A stretch of 64,000 nucleotides of DNA from Podarcis pityusensis (lineage: Eukaryota): the NCBI GenBank assembly GCA_964106645.2, contig OZ067046.1. The stretch is one strand, 5' to 3'. Positions 1-21,800 of the stretch are shown here, in pieces (the stretch's first letter is position 1; each line of letters begins with the position of its first letter). The notes beneath the pieces are model-generated. The model made no database searches and had not been told where the DNA came from. It saw only the letters and a program-made list of their open reading frames with translations. The translations under genes and the position numbers were made by a program.

Positions 1-1150
1 GCCCAGCAGTCACAAAATGGTGGTGCAGGGGCAGAACAAGTTGCAAAATGGTGGCAAGGCAGAGTTTGGCACAAGGAGCTGGCAATCACTTGCATGATTT
101 TCTACTGGTATCAAATCAATCTTTGGAAATGGCTATTTTTTACCTCAGCATTTTCGTTGCAGCAAGGAATCCACTACGTCAGTTTTCCTAGTGCTAAATA
201 CAGGCACTTTTTCTGGTCCTGTTTCTTCTGATATCCCCCATTTTCCATTCCTGGTTTGTCTGTTGTTGATTACGTATGTCATATATTAGCTTTTTACCTC
301 ACTTTCTAACTTCCTTCAACATCTCCTCAGTTTCTTTTCCCTTAGTGGAGGAAGACATTTCCCTCCTCTCCCCTGCCAACTTCTCTGTCTCCCCAGCCCC
401 GTTATCTCAGCATGTAAGAAATTATGGGTGCTGGCATGGGTATGCTGAACACATTTAGTGAAGGGTTTTGTTTAAAAACAAGCTTCTGTATCGTGTATTT
501 GTACATTAACAGATATTTTAGGCTATATATTTTCTGGTGGGAGTGTTTTCCTGCAGGAGGGGAGCTGACAGGAAAAAAATAACAATCACCTTTAAGGACA
601 ATCAAAGATGAAGGAGAAGAATGTTTGGAGGGGCTTTTGACCTTGCAGCAGAGGGATGAGGGAAAATGGTTGTGGGAAAAGCATCCATGTTGAAAGAATA
701 GTAACTCTGGCTAGAGAATAAGAGATTACATTTACTGCTGGAATATCATCTTGGCTGTGAGTCCTGCAAGCCCTGCTCCCTGCTTTCTTCCAACTGTCCT
801 GGGACTGACTCTAGGTAGAAATGATGAGGCTGCTGAACAGACTCTGGGTGGGGGCATTGCTTAGGGATTTTTGCTGAGGGCGTGTTATTGTTGCTGTTAT
901 TGATATTAATTTGTGTAGCTTTATTATGATTTATGTGGAAATTGTTCAGTTTGGTTGTGTACTTTTTGATGTTTTAATTATCCCTTATCTAGTTGTTCAG
1001 TTTGGTTGTGTACTTTTTGATGTTTTAATTATCCCTCATGACTACTTTTGCTGTATTTTGAATTGTGCATTTCTTTTCATGGTGTAAGCCACCTGAAACA
1101 TGGCTGTAACTGGAAAGGTGGCATGCAGATAAAATGATGTATGTATGTTT
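1..1150. repeat. Local duplication, copy 1 (continues off the left edge of the window)
   Basis: Colinear with 1829-4007, e.g. gcccagcagtcacaaaatggtggtgcagggg at both 1 and 1829. Confidence 0.92.
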
Positions 1151-6262: not shown

Positions 6263-7421
6263 CAGCGGCAGGGCACGCCGTGGGGTGGGGCACGCCGTGG
6301 GGTGGGGTATGCCGTCGGAATGACTGCGTCCTTCTCAGCCGTCCTTCCTCGGATCTTAATCACAATCAGAGGCGTAGAGTGAGGGGTGCTGGGGGGCGTC
6401 GCCCCAGGTGCAATCTTGTGAGGGGGGTGCTGGGTGCCAGAGCTGCTGCATCCTTCTCAGCTGGAGGGCAATAACTTCACAGTATTTCACATGCAAGGGA
6501 GAGATGTGACGGCTTCATGCGCCGGCCCCACACTGCTTTTGTGGGGATTGTGGGACCTGTAGGGCGCTCAAGCCACTGCGTCCCCCTCAGCCACCCTTTG
6601 GCTGGAGGGCACTCAGAAGAGATGTGGCAGCTTGGGTACCCTGCAAAAGCAGCGAGAAGCCGCAAAAGCAGTGTGGAGCCGGCGCATGGAGCCGCCACAT
6701 CTCTCCCTTACATGTGAAATACTGTGAAGAAATTGTCCTGGCACTTTTCAAACTGTGTTGCTTGAAATGCACAGTGCAGCGTTTTCCCCAGCTACCGCTG
6801 TCGCCGTCTTCCACATCACAGTATCATTCATATTACAGCTGTATGAGAGGACTAAAAAATTCTAAATAGGCCAAGGCTTTACAACCGAAAGAGGGTATCT
6901 CTTCTCCATCATTGAACCAGCCAGAAATACATGTCAGCATTTTTCTTAGTTGGGAATCAAAAACATGTACTTCCAACATCTACACATCACAATGAATAAC
7001 TGACTGTACTTCCCCAATGCCTGGAAGCATTTAAAACCTTCCTCAGATCTTAATCACAATTACAGGCGTAGGTTGGGGCGTGCTGGGGGGGACATCGCCC
7101 CGAGTGCAGTCTTGGGAGGGGGGCACAGGGTACCAGAGCTGCTGAATCCTTCACAGTTGGAAAGACGCAGCAGCTCCATGTGCCGGCCCCACACTGCTTT
7201 TGAGGGCAGCGCAGGACCTGCAGGGTGCCCAAGCCACCACATCTCTTCTGGGCGCCCTTTAGCTGGAGGGTGGCTATGGGGAACACTGAGGGTCCCACGT
7301 TGCCTGCAAAAGCAGCACGGGGCCAGCGCATAAAGCCGCCACAGCCCTCTGGCTGAGAAGGAAGCAGCAGCTCCGGTGCCCTCTGTGCCCCCCCAGCAGC
7401 CCCCACCCCACTATACCTCTG
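6263..7421. mobile_element. Composite hAT-type non-autonomous element in the 3'UTR, carrying copied flanking DNA
   Basis: 8-bp TSD ATTGTGAT (6255-6262) / AATGTGAT (7422-7429); CAG...CTG ends; GC-rich nested inverted repeats. Confidence 0.75.
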
Positions 7422-7832: not shown

Positions 7833-10800
7833 CTGCAAACACAACAGGATAGGAGGTAAATAAATCTCAAGGTATTTAGAACTAAAATAGCCAATGTATT
7901 TATATGTTAGGCTTGTTCACTTGTAACACTAAACCCAGAGTGTAGCATGCACATTCACTCTCCATGCCCTTTCCTGTGCAGCCAGGATCAGGACTTTGGA
8001 AAATAAGGTAAATACTAGCCATGAATTCTCGCTAGTTGGTACATAGGAATCAGATATTAGAGTTTAACTAACCAAATTATGTTTTGAAACAAGCCAGCTT
8101 CATAACCTACGGTTTTAAAGTTGGTCTGTTTAGAACAGGGCTGGCAAACCTGTGGCACACTGACTAATCTTGACCCACAAGGCCATTTCGCACACTCACT
8201 TGTCCATCAGCCAAGGGCAAAGTACCTCCCTCTGTTATCTGTTTCAGCAGCATATTCACGTGGTGAGCAGAGAGTTATAGGATCTGGCTGGTAACAGGCA
8301 TACTCAGCCAAAGCCCTGCAGTACACTTTAAACCACTGGTTGGGTTGTTTGCAAAAGGGCTTTCAAATATCCCTTGATGGTGCTTTGAAGTCTCAAAAGT
8401 GCAGGCTGCAAAGCACAATGCTACCTGATGATTGACAAGTGGACAGCACTACTCACATGTCAAATTACAACCCCCAGAGGTGGGGAGATAAGGATTTGGT
8501 CTACCAGTCAGAAAAATGTCCCCAACCGACTTTAGAAACTAACCAGAGTCTGTTTTAAGCTCCAATCTCTAGTTGATCAGTAATAAGTCAGGTTTCTTTA
8601 ACACTGGAAGTAAATACTAGCAAAAGCCTTCTCAGGCTGTCCAGCAGAAGCTGAATGGGTGAAGCAAGAGCCTTTGTTTGAGTCTGTGTACATAGTGCTA
8701 AACTATAATTTTACTTTTGCATGTGAACCCGCTCACTGTGTTTACATCTCTCTCAAGTAAATACTGAACCTTCTGAACCTTATGTTTCTTTCAGCATGGC
8801 TCTTCCATTTACCCTTTAGGTTAAAATATCATTTGGCTGCTTTGCCATCTCCACTTTAATTTTACCAAATCAGACTGTTTTTAACATTCAACTCAGTAAA
8901 GTTCTAATGCTTGCTACAAACACCTTGCTACAAACATTACATGGCCCTGCACTTGACTCAATATTAAGTTACAATCCTGAGAGCATTGATGTGCTGCAGA
9001 GGAAGTGCAAACTTTACAGCTTTTTAGTCTACAAAGTATTTGAAGACCTCTTGGATTTTACACCAAAAGAAGAATTCTACCCATGGAAAATCCTCCCTCT
9101 TAGAACCACGATATACACCGCATAAAAACAATCAATAAATGATTGGATGACCTGCCAGCACTTCCGTCATAAGAACAAGAAACAAAGCCAGAAACACTTC
9201 TGAGCTCAGAGCTGGATAAAAGTACACACCCTCTCTTGCACCTGCATAAACTGTTCTGGATGCAAAAGCACTTATGGAAACGAACCCTTAACTTATTATT
9301 TTCAAAATGTTATAAGATGTTTACCATCCTCCTCTGTGGAAAACCCTTGAGACTGATAGTGAACCAGATGTGGGTCTGACTCATTTGGTTTGTGCCACTG
9401 AGGTTTTCCCACAGGCCTGCTAGATGGAGGACCCTGTGGTTGCTGCTGTGAAGCTGAAGTCCCAGGGGCTTCACTTGACCGTGCCACCATCCTAGACCTT
9501 TGAAGTGCCACGTTGTAATCCGGAGGTTTTCGGGCTGGGTGGGAAACTCCTTCAGCAAAGTCAGCAATAGGTATTCCTACATAACCAGGCGGGGTTGGTG
9601 GTGGTTCACGATAGCGGCCCTCTTTTCGAGCTGCAGTAAAATAGTGCATCATCAGCAATGATAATCATTTACATGTATTTGTTACAACTACTATCTATGC
9701 CTGTACTTAGTTCTATTATGTCATAATCCTGGTAGCTCTGATGTGCTTCCAAGGGAGTTGAACAACTTGGCATTAAAAACAACCACAGTATGGACATGAG
9801 GCAGCCCAAAAGTAAAGGCATTTACATTTCACTGAGTCCAAATGAGAGTTGAGCACATTCTTAAAGCTTTCCCATTCAAATCAATGGAATCTAAAAGTGC
9901 TTAATCCTGGCTGGATTATACAGGCACATCCATACCAAATACCTATACACCTACATATTAATTTTATATATATTATGCAATTAAAAACATGGACATAAGC
10001 AAAGCTACAAAGAAAAAGAACAAGTGAAATAGAAGATAACTAATACAAAACCTGAGCCAATTATAGAAAGCAGCTTGTGATAACACTTAAATTATGTATA
10101 TAGGGCATGGTGACATCTTGAAAAAGAATCTCAAACTTAGATTTGTAAAGAACACAGTTGATACAAAGACACTGTGAAGCATAGACAATATATGACTGTG
10201 CTTTCATCTTCTAGCAAAAAAAAGAGAGAAATAGCACTAAACCACTTTGCATATTGAAGTATATACAGTTCTCTCACTTGAGGTGATATTCTGACAAGAT
10301 TCATGTTTTGCCTAATTCTCTCAGCATAGTTAAATAAAAATAAAAAGTATTTATAGCTCAAATAATAAAGCACATATATTGTGCTCAGGTTCGGAGTTCT
10401 GTACTCCTTCCTTATGCATCATTAATATACTTTTAAATGCCTATATTGTCTTTCCAAAAAGAAGTTATCCAAGATGGTTCACAAAACAACATAAAGAATA
10501 AATACATGAATTAGCTGTAATAAGTGAGAAGGAATCTTAAAATCCAGGAAGTAAAATATTTAAGATAAGCCAAAGAAATGTGCTCCCTATTATGGGGGGG
10601 GGGGGGGCATGGCGAAAATACTCAACGACTTAAAAGTGAGGGCAGGAAGATCATTATGTGATCATGTAATTGTGTAGCCCAGGGATGTGAATTTCAGGAC
10701 AAGGGACTAAATGCAGTCCTTTGGACCACTCTAGTCAACCCTTGGCCACACACCTCACTGGTTCTGCTCCATACCCATCCTCTGAGTGCCTTTGCCTGGT

Positions 10801-13800: not shown

Positions 13801-16800
13801 CAGGATATTTTGGAAAGATCGGGCCAAGAAAGCATTATGCTTTATGGGACACAGGTTTGCAGTGTTTTGCTTTTCCTTTAAAGGCAGAGTCACTCAAGTG
13901 ATGCCTTGTAACAGAATACATGTTCCTAAAATCTGCTCATGAGAGAAAAAGCATCTACAGCTCTAGAGTAGGCTTTTGATAAATGTAATTACACTGACAT
14001 GTACTACCTACCCTATGCTGTACTGATCTGGTTCAATTATGGCTCTTCGGTCAATCCTGCCCACTCCAAGGTTAGTTTCCACAATGCTGACAGAGTGCCT
14101 CTGCCTCCTATCATCATGTAGTGATACCGGCATAGAGTCAAATGAAGAATTGCTGACAATGCTGGATCTGGAAGAAATTTCACTGTGACCAGAGTCTGAA
14201 AAGTTATCCACGGTACCACTGGGAGCCAGAGTATAACCTGTACACGGAAGAGTGATTATAATAATTTTCATTATAAAATTTTCAGCATTTGTATAATTTG
14301 TATTCAAATTATGCAGCCCCTGTACCAAAATTACTTTTTAAATTGTTGTTGTTGTTTTAAATCTGAAAACAAATAATTTATAAGGGGGTATTTATAGTTT
14401 CATCTTATTTTTAAGATAGAGAATCTGGGGGGAGAAAACATTAACTGATGATAATTTAAATATCAAAAAAAAAAATTACTTGCAGTTTCAATATCTAACT
14501 AACATGATTCAAATGGGTTCTACACTGTATGCCTTTGCCATCCATTGGGATAGAATCTGAATAGAGAAAACCAACCGTATCCCTGGACAAAGCCCACAGC
14601 AATCCAATTATAGGAATCTAATTTTGCTTAAACTGAAATAAATTTGGGGGATGGGGCGTGCTGCCACACATATGAACAATAGTAAACATGCTTGGTTCCA
14701 CAGCCAGGATTGATGCATATGGGAAACATAAATGTGGTCTCATTTGTAGAGGAAGCTTCATCATAATTCCAAAAAGAAAATATTTTGCATGAAGATTTTT
14801 ATTCCACACAAATTGTCTTCATCGTGATTTCTACCCATTTCTACCCATCCTTGATACTGTGGGAGGCTGCACACATGAATGGTTTCAGCAAACAGGGGTG
14901 AACAACTAATAATAACAACTAATAACATTATGGTTCTTGGCACTTGGATATGGGGATCATTAGGCTGCTTTATCTCCTTCCCCAACTGCATCTGAGAAGG
15001 CAGGAACATAGGAAGCTGGTTGTGCTGAGTTAGGCTGCGGGTTCATTTAGCTCAGTATGCCTGCACTCAGTATTGACTTGTACTCAGTATTGACTTGCAT
15101 CAGGATTTCTGACAGAAAATGTTCTGGCTTGCATACTTAGAATGTGACAACTTTGTGCTTTTAGGAAATGTCTGCCATGCTAAACCACAACTGACTACAT
15201 ATTTGGCATCTTAATAGGTTTAAACAGTTATCACTAACAATTACAAGAGAGGTGAACTTGTGAGAGGTGAGGAGTATTTAGACCCTGGCATACTTTTCCT
15301 TGGAGAGCTCTGTGGCGAGGTGGGAGGAGAAGATAACTGTGAAGACGCATTTGAAATTGTGTCCTCTGCTTGTTTCTTATGACGATCCAAGCTTCCCTCT
15401 TCAGAGAGTGAAAGAATTTTCTTTAAAGCTTGTGGAGAGTTTATGCCTTCAATAAAGAAGAAGTAACACATCTGATATAAATGCACACACTTTTTCTTGC
15501 ATATTCAAATGAGGCCATTCCATGGACCACTGATACTACCATTACTATGATATTTTAGCCCACCCTTCTTTTGCAGATCTGAGGGCAGTGTACATTACAC
15601 ACCCACATTTATTATCACAACCCCCCAGTAAGGTTATGCTGAGAGAATATGCTTAATGGGGATTTCAATCTAAGTCACTCCAGTCACTCTCCACACCAAC
15701 GTACAATTTATTCTAAGAAAATTATATGCAATTAATAAAAACAAATTTAAACATAACTATTCAGCCCAAGAAAAATGTAGATTAGACCAATGTTTCTGTT
15801 TTACATTCACTTGGAAAATGTGGTTGGTTCTTAGTTCTCAGCCATTCATGGAAAAAGATTGACTACAGCTAGTATCCCAGGTTATCCCCTCCCTCAGGCC
15901 TGCAACTGAGACAGAAACCTGCAGCTTAAACATGTCTGAAGCGCCATTAAATTTAGAAGGTAAATGGCTACTTCACTGATTCCATGGTATTATATATATA
16001 TATAAAACCTATGTCTTCAAAGTAAGTATAAATGAAAAATAGAGTTAAAGATAGACTCAAAAGACATTGATCACTAGATCAGGAACCATGGTTAAAATTG
16101 GATAGTTGTAAAAATGTGCAGTGGATGTCATCCACTTCAGAGTGCTGTCAAGACTGGGCTTGCATTAGCAGGCCCCAACATAGGAAGAAGAGGAAGATTG
16201 GTGGGGACTAGAGTCAGAGGTGGGGGATGAGGGGCTCTCTAGCAACTGTCAGCTCCCTTAGCGCACTACAGTTCCCAGGATTCTTTGGGGGAGGAATGAC
16301 TTTTTAAAGTGGGATGATACTGTGTTAAATGCAAACTACAGATGAGACTTTCGTGTGATCTCTTAACATTGATTCTGTTACACTTTTTAACTGAACCTTC
16401 CATTTCCAAAACACAACAGTAATAACAATGTATTAGAACCTGTGTTTTCCCCACCTTTGTTTGCAGTTGCTCAAGATGCATACCTGTCATTTGTGAAAAT
16501 ACAATCCTGAAACATGGAACTTCCGCCAGTAATTTGAAAACATTGTGGGTTTTTTAATGCTCTTGAGAATTTGTTTAACCATTTTTAACATAAAATTGTT
16601 TTTCTACTGAACAGAACAATCCGCAATACTTACCAAAGGGTGGAAGGTCTTTGACTGGTACTTTCTTACGAGAGGGATAAAGTGATACAGCAGGAACCTG
16701 CAGTGCTTGGTTTGCTTTGTGCTGCTGTTGCTGCTGCACTTTCTGCTGGATACCTGACCTATGTGCGACTGGGGATGTTTCAGGTTTTCCAGACCGTTTT

Positions 16801-18780
16801 TCCCCTGGAGTCTTGGGTACTTTAAATAAAAAGTAGAATTAAGATTACAGTTAAGACTACCTCAAGAGTACTTGATTTTATATTAAACGGTGTCTGGAAG
16901 AATGATAAATGATGGAAAAGAGATATCCTCTCTTGGTTGAAAAACCTTTGAATTTTTTAGTCCTCTCATTCAGCTATAATATACTACCACAAACTATAGT
17001 AAAATGATGCCCTAATCAGCAGTTGGAGAGCCAATTAGGTAATGTATGCCATTTAAGAAACAAGTACCACATATGCCAACTGTAATATTGTCTACAATTT
17101 GCAATGGCATGGAATAACTTGTTTTCTAGCGATCAGCTTGATTAGAAACACATACTTCTCTCAATGATGCTGTGGCCAAGCCTAAGCCTGAGGGACAGTT
17201 AAGCTGTAGGCTAAATAAAGATAAATTAACAGCTCATTTGCCATGACTGAGGTGCACACCCAACTAAGAAAAATGCTCACATGTATTGCTGGCTGGTTCA
17301 CATTGTAGAGAGAGTGCCTGAAGGCTCTCTTCATCCATTTCCAGATCCAAATTGGAGAGATACTGCTTGACTTTCCGAGCCATCTGAGCATCTTCATATA
17401 GCTTTTTGGCATTGAGGAAGGAGCTGCGGCGGACCCGCTTTTTATGTCCACCTGTTTGTGCAACATCAAGGACTGCTGCATTTGTACTGCCTTGACTGAG
17501 AGACCTGGGGTGAAAAGAGACAAGATGACATGTAACTTAGCTCATCGCTGCATCCTTCAATGACTTGAAACATGCAAAGGTCTGCATGAATGTCAGTCTA
17601 TGGTCAAAGCTTACATGCCTCATTCAAGTAAGTCATACAGCTACAATAGGAAAAGGATAAAAATAAAGAACAACAATCAGTTGCAATTGTGAATATGGAT
17701 TCATTAAAGTCAGCCCCTGAGAATTACTCTGCTCCAAGTATGAAATTCCATGTCATTGGGGAAATGGTTAAACTCTCTCCCAGTAGCCTTGAGTATTACA
17801 AGGACAGAAATATTAAGGCAGGCTCATGCAGCAAGGTGTCTCAGACCAGTAAACAGTGGTCAAGCCTCCTGAAACTCAAAATCCACTACTCTCAAAATCA
17901 GGCAGGAAATGTCCACTTTGTACTTTTCAGGTGCCTCTATTAAAACATTTAATTCCATCTGCAATGTGCCAAAAAGTCTACTGCATTTTCATTCCCCACT
18001 TCCCTCGCCTTAAATAGGACTTCATGTTAAATAAAAACGTTCAATTAGTTAATGAGGAAGCATGCAAATTTGGATGTGTTTATGTATGGGAGCTATTTTG
18101 CTTCTAATATGTTAACAGCAATAATGAAGGCTGGTTTGTAGAAAGAAAATTTAGTTAGTTGAGCTGTTAAAAATCACAACATTGGAATAAAATTTGTGGA
18201 TTTGGATGGTTCTATTAACTTGTGTGGCGTGTAAATTTACTGCTTATTTTTATCTGAACCACCATCATGTAACCCCATTTTGGTATACTCTTCCCATTGA
18301 GACTGGTTACGTATGTACATATGTTAGGGATAATGCAAGCTGAGAGGCTAATCTGCATAACAGCCAGCCATTGTGCACATTCATGACTCATGGAGAATGT
18401 GCACCTCAACTGTCCATAAAGATAAAATTGTGCATATTTCCTGGCCCATACGCATACTCTCAAAAACATGATAATTTTTCTCAGCATCTCAGCATCATTT
18501 TTTACATTCTTTGAGCAATATGCATGTTATCCTGTCACTAGATATACTCTACAATAGTATGTCCTCTTTTCCATGCCGCTCAGCTGTTCTGCACAACCAA
18601 CTGACTCTGGCATCTCTTCTCCACAACCCAGCTGTTTCCCCACTGTTCAGCGATGTTAATGGATACATGGGAGGTGAGTGTATGCAAATGGACTGGGAGC
18701 TGAGGGGTGTATGTGTTAATTCATTCACACAGAAGTTCCCAGTGTCTTTATGCGGGATGGAAAGACAGGTAGAAGTAGAG

Positions 18781-18846
<66 letters not shown>

Positions 18847-21800
18847 CACCCACACTTTATTCCTTACACCTTACACTCTTATGCATCCAAACACATATAT
18901 TGTTGTATGTATGTATGTATGTAGTGCTTGTGTTGGAACAGTGTCCCCTGTGAATTCTGTGTGAATATTCCCAAAGAATGTGGGGGAAAACCTGTCATGA
19001 TATGCACATTCCTTGAGGTCTGCTAGAGAATATGTATACTTGCTGGATAATGTACAAAATGTTGTTGAGATATGCTCAGTCCTTAAGACCACATAGAAAA
19101 TTCTTTTGCATGGACAAATTATGTCCACTCAACTCACATTATCCCTAACATATATGAGGCAATTTTATGAATTCTAGATCAAACCAATGAATCTCACTGC
19201 TTTGCACTTCTTTAACGTTTCACAGCTCTTGGGTTTATAACCTCAAGCAAAAGCAGCACTGGATTAAATCTGATGCAGGTACAGAAGGGTTAACAAAAGG
19301 AGGAAAATGCCAGAGCACCAGAAAATTAAGGGAAGCAGGTAGGAAACAATGCAGATTTTCAGAAAAAGAAGTTTGTCTGTATGTGTTCTCTCCAACCACT
19401 TACCCCAAACTCCTCCACTTCTTCTTCCTGCAAGTGAGAGCCATGAGTATTGAAGCATGGATTTAAGGAAGAGACAGAGAGATTATAAGCTCAGAAAGAA
19501 AGGATCAGACTTCAGGACAAGCAGTACCAGAAAGCCCAGAACAGCCTTCTCTCAGTCAGTCAGCATAATACATTAAATAGGTGTCTATAGAGTGCCCATA
19601 AGATTAAAGCTCATTTCACACTAAACTGAATTCATCTTGGATTACTTACACCTTTAGCGTAAAATAGTGTTCTAAAATCTGGAGTGAATTTTGTTTCTAT
19701 CCTCTTTCTGCTTTTCAGCTTTCACATAATATAATTTCCTTTTAAAACATTTATTCATTCAATATGCATTTCCTATACATTGAACCAAAGGGGTTATTTT
19801 AACTATCCCAAATGATTCAATGCAAACTCTGCTTATATCTATTTTATCTAAGTAAGAATAAGACTAGTGATTAAATATCTATTATTTCTCTTGTTCTCCA
19901 TGACCTTTAAACAATGAACGTAACATAATTACGCAATGACAGGAAGAGCCATTTCCATCCGTACTGCCTTTTCCTGATGGGGGCATTTGATTGGTTGCAA
20001 CACTTACCCACCCCTGTGAATCAGTTAATTTGCACAACATTATAATTACAGACCAGACAAGAGGGGGAAATGTATTACTTGAATATTTCTTAAAACTCAA
20101 AACTTGCAAAACAATGGCTTCAGGGCTTCAGTCTAGCAAGTGTATGCGTCATAATTATTATAATAGTTCAAGTTATACTATGAGCTGTCTGAAGCAGTCT
20201 TCAACACTGAACTCTTGAACTGCTTTTCTTGTTAATTGCTTTTTGGGGAAAGGGCTGTAGCTCAGTGGTAGATCATCTGCTTTGCATGCAGAAAGCCCCA
20301 GGTTCAATCCTTGGCCTTGACAGGCAGGGTTGGGAAAAGAGCCCTGCCTAAAATACTGGACAGCCACTGCTGGTCAGCATAGGAAGTTCTAAGCTTGATA
20401 GACCAATGGTCTGACTCAGTATAAGGCAGCCTCCTGTGTGTTCATATGAGTTTAAAAGGAAACATGGTGATCTTATTTAGAACTCACTATTGGCACAAAA
20501 GCCCAAATAACTTGTAATGCAAGAACAAAATACATATCTAAGATCAAAACAAATCTCATGTATGTTTGTGTTTGAATTCATTTGTGTTAGCAGTATATTT
20601 GTAATAGTAGAATATCCTTCATGAATGCACATATGTAGAAATCAAACAAAACCATTGTAAGAAAAAGTGTTGCATAGAATGGTGAGGAAGAATCAAATTC
20701 TGCGTAAAAAGCAAGCAGGGTCTACTTGCTATGATTGGGCAATGCTCATTTGTCATGAACTTTAGGAAGCTTGGCGTAGATATCAAGAGGACAACACAGA
20801 TGAAAGGTGTTACTCATCTTGATGAAAAGACAACTGCTTACTTTCAGGCTGATATATAAAGAGAATATCTGATTGCTGTCAAATAACTTGCAGCTAATTA
20901 GCTGGAGAAATAAAGACAATTCTATGTCTTACCCTTGTTCTCTGAATGCAAGCATTAAACACTAGCCAAGTTTAAAGTATGTATCTGTAACACAAGACAA
21001 TCTTAGCTCAATGGTTTTTATTTCACACTTCAAGTGCGTTAGTCTTTGGTCAAAAGAACTCACCTAGTCCTGAACATTAAAGCAGGATCCATGTTAACAG
21101 AAGCCATTCGACCCACATGGCGAATCTCTTTTGCGATCATTCGTAATTTCTCAAAATTGACCAAACCTTCCACTTTGGAATCATTTCCTACATTGCCAAA
21201 AGAATGATAGGAAATAACTATAGTACTCTGCAATTGGTCAGTGAAAGTAAAAACATAGGTGTTGCCATCACCAAAGAGTCAATACAGAAAAAACACTTGC
21301 AACATTTACCTTCATGGAGGAATGTAAGGTCCTTTTTGATTACAGGGAACAATGGAATAATAGGAGGCTGTAGATTTTGGCTATTCAGGACATTGCGATA
21401 TTTTGCCATGTTCCTAGATGGATCAAATAAATCCTGAAGATCTTGAAACAATTTTTCATATTTGCTTGGAAGTTTTTCCCAAGTAGTTCGTAGTCTTGCA
21501 ACTGGAGCTAAGTTTAGGCCACTAAAGAATGAATTTTAAAAGATGTTGGGGGTTTTAATCTCTATTCAAAATGACACCTGCATTTGCAGCATCACAAACA
21601 TATGTTCCTGTATACAATCTTCTGAAGTAAAACTAAATGCATATCATATCATATCATATTTAGCAACGGACAAATGTAGACACTGGTAAACAAAAACACT
21701 GCTTTCAGAGATTATGCACCATAAAATTGTAGGTCTTTTCTGAACTGCAATGTTCAAGCAATATTTGTGAGTTGAAGAATCATCAAAAGATTATGGTAGC

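What the first reader, a model, noticed from the sequence alone, without database searches (positions are those of the whole stretch)
19404..20941. Candidate combinatorial microexon cassette (9 + 6 + 24 nt) just after the RAPGEF2 RasGEF domain
Seen: between the exon ending ...FRT(AG) at 21064 and the exon starting (G)SLSQG at 17504 lie three tiny segments, each bounded by CAG and GTAAG. All are multiples of 3, all are phase 2, and all end in GG. All 8 inclusion combinations are therefore in frame and stop-free, from FRTR-SLSQG to [22 protein letters not shown]. Each has UGC within about 30 nt of its acceptor. Established: UGC close to the 3' splice site is the signature of SRRM4/SRRM3-regulated neural microexons, and 3-9 nt exons are routinely missed by aligners. 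Inference: a modular, tissue-regulated switch that tunes the linker and basic patch next to the catalytic domain. Only the 24-nt exon is in the reference protein as I remember it.
Basis: partly seen in the sequence, partly recalled or inferred. Interest (0 to 1): 0.82.

Follow-up and report, generated by a model that had tools for sequence, protein, structure and literature searches.

The report
One known RAPGEF2 microexon, two look-alikes
Of the three tiny "exons" proposed after the catalytic domain of a lizard RAPGEF2 gene, only the 24-base one is real (a conserved, already known alternative microexon); the 9-base and 6-base ones have no RNA or conservation support and are most likely chance splice-site pairs.

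Summary
On the minus strand, three segments bounded by CAG and GTAAG lie between the exon ending ...MFRT(AG) at 21064 and the exon starting at 17504. They are 20941-20933 (9 nt), 20013-20008 (6 nt) and 19427-19404 (24 nt).

The evidence separates them.

- **24-nt exon (KKKWRSLG).** RNA contigs and reads show it both included and skipped. It sits in a 323-nt intronic block about 80% identical to birds. Annotated and assembled proteins from mammals to fish show it with and without. A 24-nt rapgef2 microexon, probably this one, has been deleted in zebrafish.
- **9-nt and 6-nt segments.** No junction to them was listed in four RNA runs. Nothing aligns to them in four bird loci, and nothing aligns to the 6-nt one in a second squamate-like contig. 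None of 77 near-randomly sampled mammalian isoforms has an insert there. Their acceptors are weak. Two extra in-frame pairs of this kind arise by chance in about 6% of simulated introns.

Verdict: a binary, already known alternative microexon, not an eight-way cassette. The runs' tissues are unknown and coverage was shallow, so a lizard-specific neural 9-nt exon is unlikely rather than excluded. The scan had not noted this before.

The parts
21064..21187 (-). Constitutive RAPGEF2 exon, 124 nt. It ends ...[10 protein letters not shown] plus AG (phase 2) and has donor AG|GTGAGT. It lies about 25 residues after the Pfam RasGEF domain ends.
   Evidence: Sequence and translation. Splice joints 21186->21309 and 21064->17504/19427. 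tblastn of turtle RAPGEF2. Pfam RasGEF at 881-1059 against the junction at about 1085 in P0248.
20933..20941 (-). 9-nt candidate segment cag|AGAACAAGG|gtaaga, which would add E-Q-G. Most likely a chance pseudo-exon.
   Evidence: The sequence is present. No joint to it is listed in 4 RNA runs. No alignment or motif within 4 mismatches in 4 bird loci. Acceptor pyrimidine fraction is 0.59 with a longest run of 3, at or below the bottom of the real exons. Unique in the window, not a repeat.
20008..20013 (-). 6-nt candidate segment cag|GGGTGG|gtaagt, which would add G-G. Most likely a chance pseudo-exon.
   Evidence: The sequence is present. No joint to it is listed. No counterpart in 4 bird loci or in squamate-like L002, which holds 623 nt upstream of the conserved block. 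Acceptor pyrimidine fraction is 0.50 with a longest run of 3, about the intron background of 0.47.
19404..19427 (-). Real alternative 24-nt microexon encoding KKKWRSLG, with acceptor cttgcag| and donor |gtaagt.
   Evidence: X1 RNA contig joins 21064->19427 and 19404->17504 at depth 69; the skip form is also seen. The 33-nt pattern of exon plus splice sites is almost invariant in L001, L002, L003, L007 and L008. Proteins with and without RKKKWRSLG exist.
19219..19541 (-). Conserved intronic block embedding the 24-nt microexon: about 115 nt upstream and 185 nt downstream. Presumed splicing-regulatory sequence.
   Evidence: blastn identities: 80% over 329 nt to bird L001; 84% over 349 nt to L002 and 78% to L003; 84% to L007; 80% to L008.
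17281..17504 (-). Constitutive downstream exon, 224 nt, [14 protein letters not shown]...[10 protein letters not shown].
   Evidence: Joints at 17504. 140 protein hits.
17505..18298 (-). Conserved 3' part of the intron ahead of the downstream exon, about 67-69% identical to the bird locus L001 and to L002 over roughly 0.9-1.1 kb (the alignments run on into the downstream exon).
   Evidence: blastn of window 18169-17272 against L001 and of 18298-17266 against L002.

Best explanation
This stretch of a lizard RAPGEF2 gene (minus strand) holds one real alternative microexon. It is the 24-nt exon at 19427-19404, which inserts KKKWRSLG about 25 residues after the RasGEF catalytic domain.

The exon is ancient. 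It is found from fish-type sequences to mammals, and the same insert (KKRWRSLG) occurs in a more divergent relative that I take to be the paralogue RAPGEF6. It sits in a strongly conserved intronic block and is included or skipped depending on the sample. The protein therefore switches between ...FRTR-SLSQG... and ...[17 protein letters not shown]....

The 9-nt and 6-nt segments are chance pairs of a CAG and a GTAAG in a non-conserved part of the intron. They are not used as exons at any level detected here.

Shown: the anatomy, inclusion and skipping of the 24-nt exon, its conservation, and the lack of conservation and of RNA support for the two small segments.

Inferred: that the conserved flanks carry the splicing enhancers, and that the basic/aromatic insert tunes interactions of the linker next to the catalytic domain. 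The published zebrafish deletion of a 24-nt rapgef2 microexon raised daytime locomotor activity, but that it is this same exon is itself an inference.
For: 1. RNA. Only two junction patterns leave the exon end at 21064: to 19427 and then 19404->17504 (X1 contig, depth 69), and directly to 17504 (X1 contig depth 37; X23 5 reads; X24 1 read). The X1 contig that carries the upstream exon (depth 88) ends exactly at 21063/21064. The two branch depths (69 and 37) roughly account for it.

2. Conservation. The window aligns to four bird loci and one squamate-like contig only at three places: the flanking exons, a 323-nt block round the 24-nt exon (78-84% identity), and the distal intron. CAG|24 nt|GTAAGT is almost invariant in all five. 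Sensitive blastn and a fuzzy motif search allowing 4 mismatches find nothing for the 9-nt or 6-nt segments. The homologous bird intron is only about 600-780 nt, against 1636 nt here.

3. Proteins. The 50%-identity representatives show only FRT|RKKKWRSLG|SLSQG or FRT|R|SLSQG and their fish, shark and paralogue equivalents. In members of five mammalian clusters, listed in no meaningful order, 69 of 77 have the insert, 8 skip it and none has any other insert.

4. Splice-site quality. Real exons in the window have acceptor pyrimidine fractions of 0.55-0.95 (mean 0.71) and pyrimidine runs of at least 4. The 9-nt segment has 0.59 and run 3. The 6-nt segment has 0.50 and run 3. Background CAGs in this intron average 0.47.

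5. Chance. P(>=2 in-frame stop-free CAG..GTAAG pairs) is 0.06 per simulated intron.

6. Literature. A 24-nt rapgef2 microexon (DreEX0060838) is developmentally regulated in zebrafish, with inclusion rising from 0.11 to 0.85, and has been deleted with a behavioural phenotype (PMC12626420; PMC13281805).
Against: - The tissues of the RNA runs are unknown. The raw-read runs gave only 6 junction reads.
- Logan contigs drop rare variants, and the aligner may not place a 6- or 9-nt piece. Six weaker joints were not printed. A low-abundance or strictly neuronal isoform would therefore have been missed.
- Only one other squamate-like contig (L002) was available. It does not reach the position of the 9-nt segment.
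- No turtle, crocodilian or mammalian genomic DNA was compared.
- Both small segments have very good donors (AGG|GTAAGA, TGG|GTAAGT). The 9-nt segment has two TGC within 15 nt of its AG, which resembles SRRM4-type microexons.
- The chance probability of 0.06 is low, though not decisive.
Confidence: 0.86

Rival explanations
1. The 9-nt segment, and less likely the 6-nt one, is a young lizard- or squamate-specific neural microexon. It would be included only in neurons and would add EQG (and GG) ahead of the KKKWRSLG patch.
For: - Perfect frame compatibility, strong donors, and TGC motifs close to the 9-nt acceptor.
- Slight excess of such pairs over simulation, P = 0.06.
- The splice sites are unchanged in the closely related organism A, but that is uninformative at about 2% divergence (records 4 and 6).
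- The RNA runs were not known to be neural and were shallow.
Against: - No joint to either segment is listed in four RNA runs. The two observed branches account for the depth of the upstream exon.
- There is no flanking-intron conservation, whereas the neighbouring real microexon has 323 nt of it.
- The 6-nt region is absent from squamate-like L002.
- The acceptors are weak.
- From general knowledge: neural microexons as a class are ancient and their flanks are highly conserved. PMC12626420 says the same of the encoded peptides.
Confidence: 0.08
2. The two segments are not coding exons but functional decoy or recursive-type splice sites. They would be used transiently during removal of the 1.6-kb intron, or would compete with the 24-nt exon and so modulate its inclusion.
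For: - Consensus-like GTAAG donors lie directly after short AG-bounded segments.
- Intronic reads show that the pre-mRNA is detectable in X1 at depth 4-7.
Against: - No sawtooth pattern or intermediate joints appear.
- There is no conservation. The bird introns lack any AG-N(3k)-GTRAG pair here, apart from unrelated ones in L003.
- An intron of 1.6 kb is far shorter than those known to need recursive splicing (general knowledge).
Confidence: 0.03

Closest known systems
RAPGEF2 (PDZ-GEF1) alternative 24-nt exon encoding KKKWRSLG, annotated with and without it in many vertebrates
   Same: The position is the same, between ...MFRT(R) and SLSQG. The peptide is identical. The exon and its splice sites are nearly identical in five comparator loci. 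Both inclusion and skipping are seen here and in annotated mammalian, fish and shark proteins.
   Different: Nothing of substance. This is the lizard orthologue. Its tissue pattern here is unknown because the runs are coded.
Zebrafish rapgef2 24-nt microexon DreEX0060838 (PMC12626420; PMC13281805)
   Same: Same gene and same length. Teleost-type sequences with FRQR-KKRWKSLG-SLSQG and FRQR-SLSQG both exist. In zebrafish, inclusion rises during brain development, and deletion increases daytime activity.
   Different: I could not see the zebrafish exon's sequence or coordinates, because the supplementary table is not held. Identity with this exon is therefore inferred. In srrm3 mutants its PSI changed by only about -4, so it is not clearly SRRM3-dependent.
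SRRM4/SRRM3-dependent neural microexons (3-27 nt, with UGC plus a pyrimidine tract upstream of the 3' splice site)
   Same: The sizes and the presence of TGC near the acceptors fit. The 24-nt exon has cttgcag and a UC-rich stretch (ctctctgtctcttcc) about 35-50 nt upstream.
   Different: The 9-nt and 6-nt segments have no demonstrated inclusion, no conservation and no good pyrimidine tract. Dependence on SRRM4/3 was not testable for any of the three.

Membership tests
Conserved RAPGEF2 24-nt alternative microexon (KKKWRSLG): tested on 19427-19404 | Lies between the exon ending MFRT(AG) and the exon starting (G)SLSQG, and encodes KKKWRSLG in phase 2 | tested here: met
   The same peptide appears in 120 top hits and 69 sampled isoforms.
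Conserved RAPGEF2 24-nt alternative microexon (KKKWRSLG): tested on 19427-19404 | Both inclusion and skipping observed in RNA | tested here: met
   Inclusion joints have depth 69 in X1. Skip joints have depth 37 in X1, 5 reads in X23 and 1 read in X24.
Conserved RAPGEF2 24-nt alternative microexon (KKKWRSLG): tested on 19427-19404 | Exon and flanking intron conserved across distant vertebrates | tested here: met
   78-84% identity over 230-350 nt to four bird loci and L002. The splice sites are invariant.
Vertebrate neural microexon (SRRM4/SRRM3 type): tested on the 9-nt segment 20941-20933 | Junction reads showing inclusion in mRNA | tested here: not met
   No joint to 20941 or 20933 is listed in X1, X7, X23 or X24. 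Caveats: tissues unknown, shallow coverage, 6 weaker joints not printed.
Vertebrate neural microexon (SRRM4/SRRM3 type): tested on the 9-nt segment 20941-20933 | Conservation of the exon, its AG/GT and the flanking intron in other vertebrate classes | tested here: not met
   No alignment and no motif within 4 mismatches in L001, L003, L007 or L008. No other squamate sequence covered this spot.
Vertebrate neural microexon (SRRM4/SRRM3 type): tested on the 9-nt segment 20941-20933 | UGC plus a pyrimidine-rich tract just upstream of the 3' splice site | tested here: inconclusive
   Two TGC lie within 15 nt. The pyrimidine fraction is 0.59 and the longest run is 3, at or below the weakest real exons.
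Vertebrate neural microexon (SRRM4/SRRM3 type): tested on the 6-nt segment 20013-20008 | Junction reads showing inclusion in mRNA | tested here: not met
   No joint to 20013 or 20008 is listed. The same caveats apply.
Vertebrate neural microexon (SRRM4/SRRM3 type): tested on the 6-nt segment 20013-20008 | Conservation in other vertebrates | tested here: not met
   Absent from four bird loci and from the 623 nt upstream of the conserved block in squamate-like L002.
Vertebrate neural microexon (SRRM4/SRRM3 type): tested on the 6-nt segment 20013-20008 | UGC plus a pyrimidine-rich tract just upstream of the 3' splice site | tested here: not met
   One TGC at about -21. The tract aaattaactgattcacag has pyrimidine fraction 0.50, equal to the intron background.
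Vertebrate neural microexon (SRRM4/SRRM3 type): all three segments | Inclusion depends on SRRM4/SRRM3 and is enriched in neurons | not testable with these tools
   Run tissues are coded and no knock-down data exist for this species. The zebrafish 24-nt exon changed by only about -4 PSI in the srrm3 mutant.

The most novel reading that the evidence does not exclude
The 9-nt segment at 20941-20933 is a young, lizard-lineage-specific neuronal microexon. It would add Glu-Gln-Gly directly before the conserved KKKWRSLG insert, giving RAPGEF2 a second, independently regulated switch next to the catalytic domain. It would be a rare example of de novo birth of a microexon beside an ancient one.
Probability: 0.07. 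Interest if true: 0.45.

Novelty: already known. Interest (0 to 1): 0.1.

Why it matters
As it stands, the finding matters little. It re-finds the known alternative 24-nt RAPGEF2 microexon in a lizard and shows how well the exon and its intronic flanks are conserved.

The result is useful as a calibration for this scan. Frame-compatible CAG...GTAAG pairs of 6-9 nt turn up in ordinary introns at an appreciable rate: about 0.3 per 3.5 kb in simulation, with other examples in this same intron. A nearby TGC is expected by chance one time in three. Such pairs should therefore not be called microexons without junction reads or flank conservation.

If the 9-nt exon were nevertheless real, it would be a case of lineage-specific microexon birth next to a catalytic domain.

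Tried and rejected
- **Biased protein search.** A word-index search with a full-length RAPGEF2 (P0007, region 700-830) gave 2023 hits. Only the best 120 were listed and all were canonical, so it could not reveal insert-bearing isoforms. I replaced it with cluster-member samples.
- **Query too short.** The 41-aa query found mainly mammal-type ORFs (KVDGLV). I did not fetch their contigs because some could be human. I fetched only the non-mammal type, P0355. P0261, whose sequence is also filed under Homo sapiens, was left out of the scans.
- **Alligator.** The Alligator isoform P0226 is not on record for DNA look-up.
- **More squamates.** Only P0001 (a 1.1-kb contig, not fetched) and P0066/L002 were found. 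The P0066 cluster has a single member and the window's own short ORF is not in the collection.
- **Papers.** The eLife supplementary table with microexon sequences is not among the files held. The neighbouring VastDB ids are absent. The MicroExonator supplements do not mention Rapgef2. The CHyMErA-seq paper has no supplements held.
- **Repeat origin of the two small segments.** Rejected: both are unique in the window.
- **Back-splice or circular RNA behind the 'goes back' joints at 17298/17300->16950.** Rejected: the reads come from a rearranged copy in the 3' UTR.
- **Joined models.** I did not build or search a joined spliced protein model.

Full report
**Observation.** The gene runs on the minus strand.
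- The upstream exon is 21187-21064. It translates to [40 protein letters not shown] and ends with AG before gtgagt.
- The three small segments are cag|AGAACAAGG|gtaaga (20941-20933), cag|GGGTGG|gtaagt (20013-20008) and cag|GAAGAAGAAGTGGAGGAGTTTGGG|gtaagt (19427-19404).
- The downstream exon is 17504-17281.

All three segments are multiples of three, in phase 2 and end in GG. Every junction codon is therefore Arg (AGR) or Gly (GGR), and no inner codon is a stop. I checked the frames by reading. I did not build or search a joined spliced model; exons were searched one at a time by reference.

tblastn of a turtle RAPGEF2 maps 21 exons of the gene between 50630 and 9326. Pfam places RasGEF at 881-1059 of that protein, and the junction is at about residue 1085. 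'Just after the RasGEF domain' is therefore correct.

**Chance.**
- The 3559-nt intron holds six CAG-N(3..30)-GTAAG pairs.
- Simulated introns with the same dinucleotide transitions carry 0.34 in-frame, stop-free pairs on average. P(>=2) is 0.06.
- One of the three observed pairs is a genuine exon, so the excess is two pairs at P of about 0.06. That is suggestive but weak, especially for a pattern picked out by eye from 64 kb.
- A TGC within 30 nt of an AG is expected about one time in three.

**RNA.** The run search returned small RNA-type runs of closely related organisms and two bulk RNA-seq runs kept as raw reads. I laid X23, X24, X1 and X7 on 16400-21400.
- Only two paths leave the donor at 21064. 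The first goes to 19427 and then 19404->17504, which includes the 24-nt exon (X1 contig, depth 69). The second goes straight to 17504, skipping everything (X1 depth 37; 5 reads in X23; 1 read in X24).
- The long X1 contig carrying the upstream exons (depth 88) stops exactly at 21063/21064, where the assembly graph branches. The two branch depths roughly account for it.
- No joint to the 9-nt or 6-nt segment is listed, and no unplaced letters between joint sides were reported.
- Limits: tissues are unknown, the raw-read runs gave only six junction reads, contigs drop rare variants, and six weaker joints were not printed.
- The 24-nt exon is therefore truly alternative: about 65% included in X1 and 0 of 6 in X23/X24. 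The two small segments are at best rare.

**Conservation.** I obtained five comparator loci.
- L001 is an annotated bird locus (Mystacornis).
- L003-L006, L007 and L008 are Logan contigs. They are bird-like by exon sequence and by intron similarity.
- L002 is one squamate-like contig. Its exon shares the derived [13 protein letters not shown] with the window.

The window aligns to them only at three places:
- the flanking exons;
- a 323-nt block round the 24-nt exon (window 19541-19219), 78-80% identical to L001, L003 and L008 and 84% to L007 and L002;
- the last 0.7-0.8 kb of the intron before the SLSQG exon.

The 33-nt string of CAG, the 24-nt exon and GTAAGT is almost invariant in all five.

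Sensitive blastn and a fuzzy motif search allowing four mismatches find nothing corresponding to the 9-nt or 6-nt segments. The bird intron between the FRT exon and the 24-nt exon is only about 600-780 nt, against 1636 nt here. L002 extends 623 nt upstream of the conserved block without any counterpart of the 6-nt segment. It does not reach the 9-nt position.

**Proteins.**
- The exhaustive representative search with the downstream exon gave 140 hits. Every one that spans the junction reads either FRT|RKKKWRSLG|SLSQG or FRT|R|SLSQG, or the fish, shark or paralogue equivalent: FRQ|RKKRWKSLG, FRQ|R, FRN|RKKRWRSLG.
- Members of five mammalian clusters, listed in no meaningful order, gave 69 isoforms with the insert, 8 without it and none with any other insert.
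- The alternative 24-nt exon is therefore ancient and already annotated. No additional microexon is annotated at this junction in the sample.
- Squamate annotations could not be reached.

**Splice-site quality.** Real exons in the window have acceptor pyrimidine fractions of 0.55-0.95 (mean 0.71) and pyrimidine runs of at least 4. The 9-nt segment has 0.59 and run 3. The 6-nt segment has 0.50 and run 3. That is indistinguishable from background CAGs in this intron (0.47 +/- 0.12). The donors of both segments are strong.

**Literature.**
- A rapgef2 microexon is among 95 that are conserved between mouse and zebrafish and regulated during brain development. Its deletion increased movement frequency in zebrafish larvae (PMC12626420). 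Its inclusion rises from 0.11 to 0.85 across development (supplement).
- A second paper states that rapgef2 'contains several microexons' and that mis-splicing of the 24-nt one (DreEX0060838) raises daytime activity. Its PSI fell only from 91 to 87 in the srrm3 mutant (PMC13281805).
- I infer, but could not verify, that this is the KK(K/R)W(R/K)SLG exon.

**Conclusion.** The finding contains one real and already known feature: the conserved alternative 24-nt RAPGEF2 microexon. It also contains two look-alike segments that fail the available tests for RNA use, conservation and acceptor quality. The most likely mechanism is a binary switch that inserts a basic/aromatic octapeptide into the linker after the catalytic domain, controlled by the conserved flanking intron. 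A lizard-specific neuronal 9-nt exon remains possible at roughly 7%. Brain RNA-seq with a microexon-aware mapper, or a squamate genome alignment, would settle it.

Noticed in passing
window 20250-20440 (+ strand), inside the intron between the 9-nt and 6-nt segments: A tRNA-derived SINE. ARAGORN calls a tRNA-Ala(TGC)-like head at 20250-20321. RNA and contig depth there is 100 to 1000 times that of the surroundings, with many loose ends, so the element is highly repeated and expressed. Two diverged copies lie at 49652-49537 and 11361-11234.
   Followed up: partly
window 6830-6865 and 6913-6954 versus 16947-16982 and 17259-17300: The RAPGEF2 3' UTR carries two short pieces (92% and 95% identical), in inverted orientation and swapped order, of the intron and of the exon-end/donor region of the SLSQG exon. 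The UTR RNA is therefore complementary to that 5' splice-site region over about 42 nt. Reads from this copy were mislaid on the intron. That explains the 'goes back 349/351' joints, the opposite-strand reads and the apparent C>G at 17278. The copy lies inside the stretch where another first-stage note predicts a dsRNA fold-back.
   Followed up: partly
window 18169/18298-17505: About 0.7-0.8 kb of intron directly upstream of the SLSQG exon is alignable to the bird locus L001 and the squamate-like L002 at about 67-69% identity, measured over alignments that run on into the exon. That is unusually deep intronic conservation, and its function was not examined.
   Followed up: no
window 18773-18856: A long (TC)n/(AC)n dinucleotide microsatellite in the intron. 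The reads tool skipped it as a repeat.
   Followed up: no
window 9326-9631: The last tblastn-mapped coding exon reads on into ...[12 protein letters not shown] if not spliced. The usual C-terminal end of RAPGEF2 must therefore lie on one further small exon downstream, which tblastn did not map.
   Followed up: no
proteins P0009, P0014 and P0330-P0341 (Logan contigs, not this genome): A cluster of ORFs carries a degraded copy of the SLSQG exon (KDTQMARK, EKSLQML) in a GC-rich context. It looks like a diverged or pseudogene copy of RAPGEF2 in some mammal. It was not fetched.
   Followed up: no
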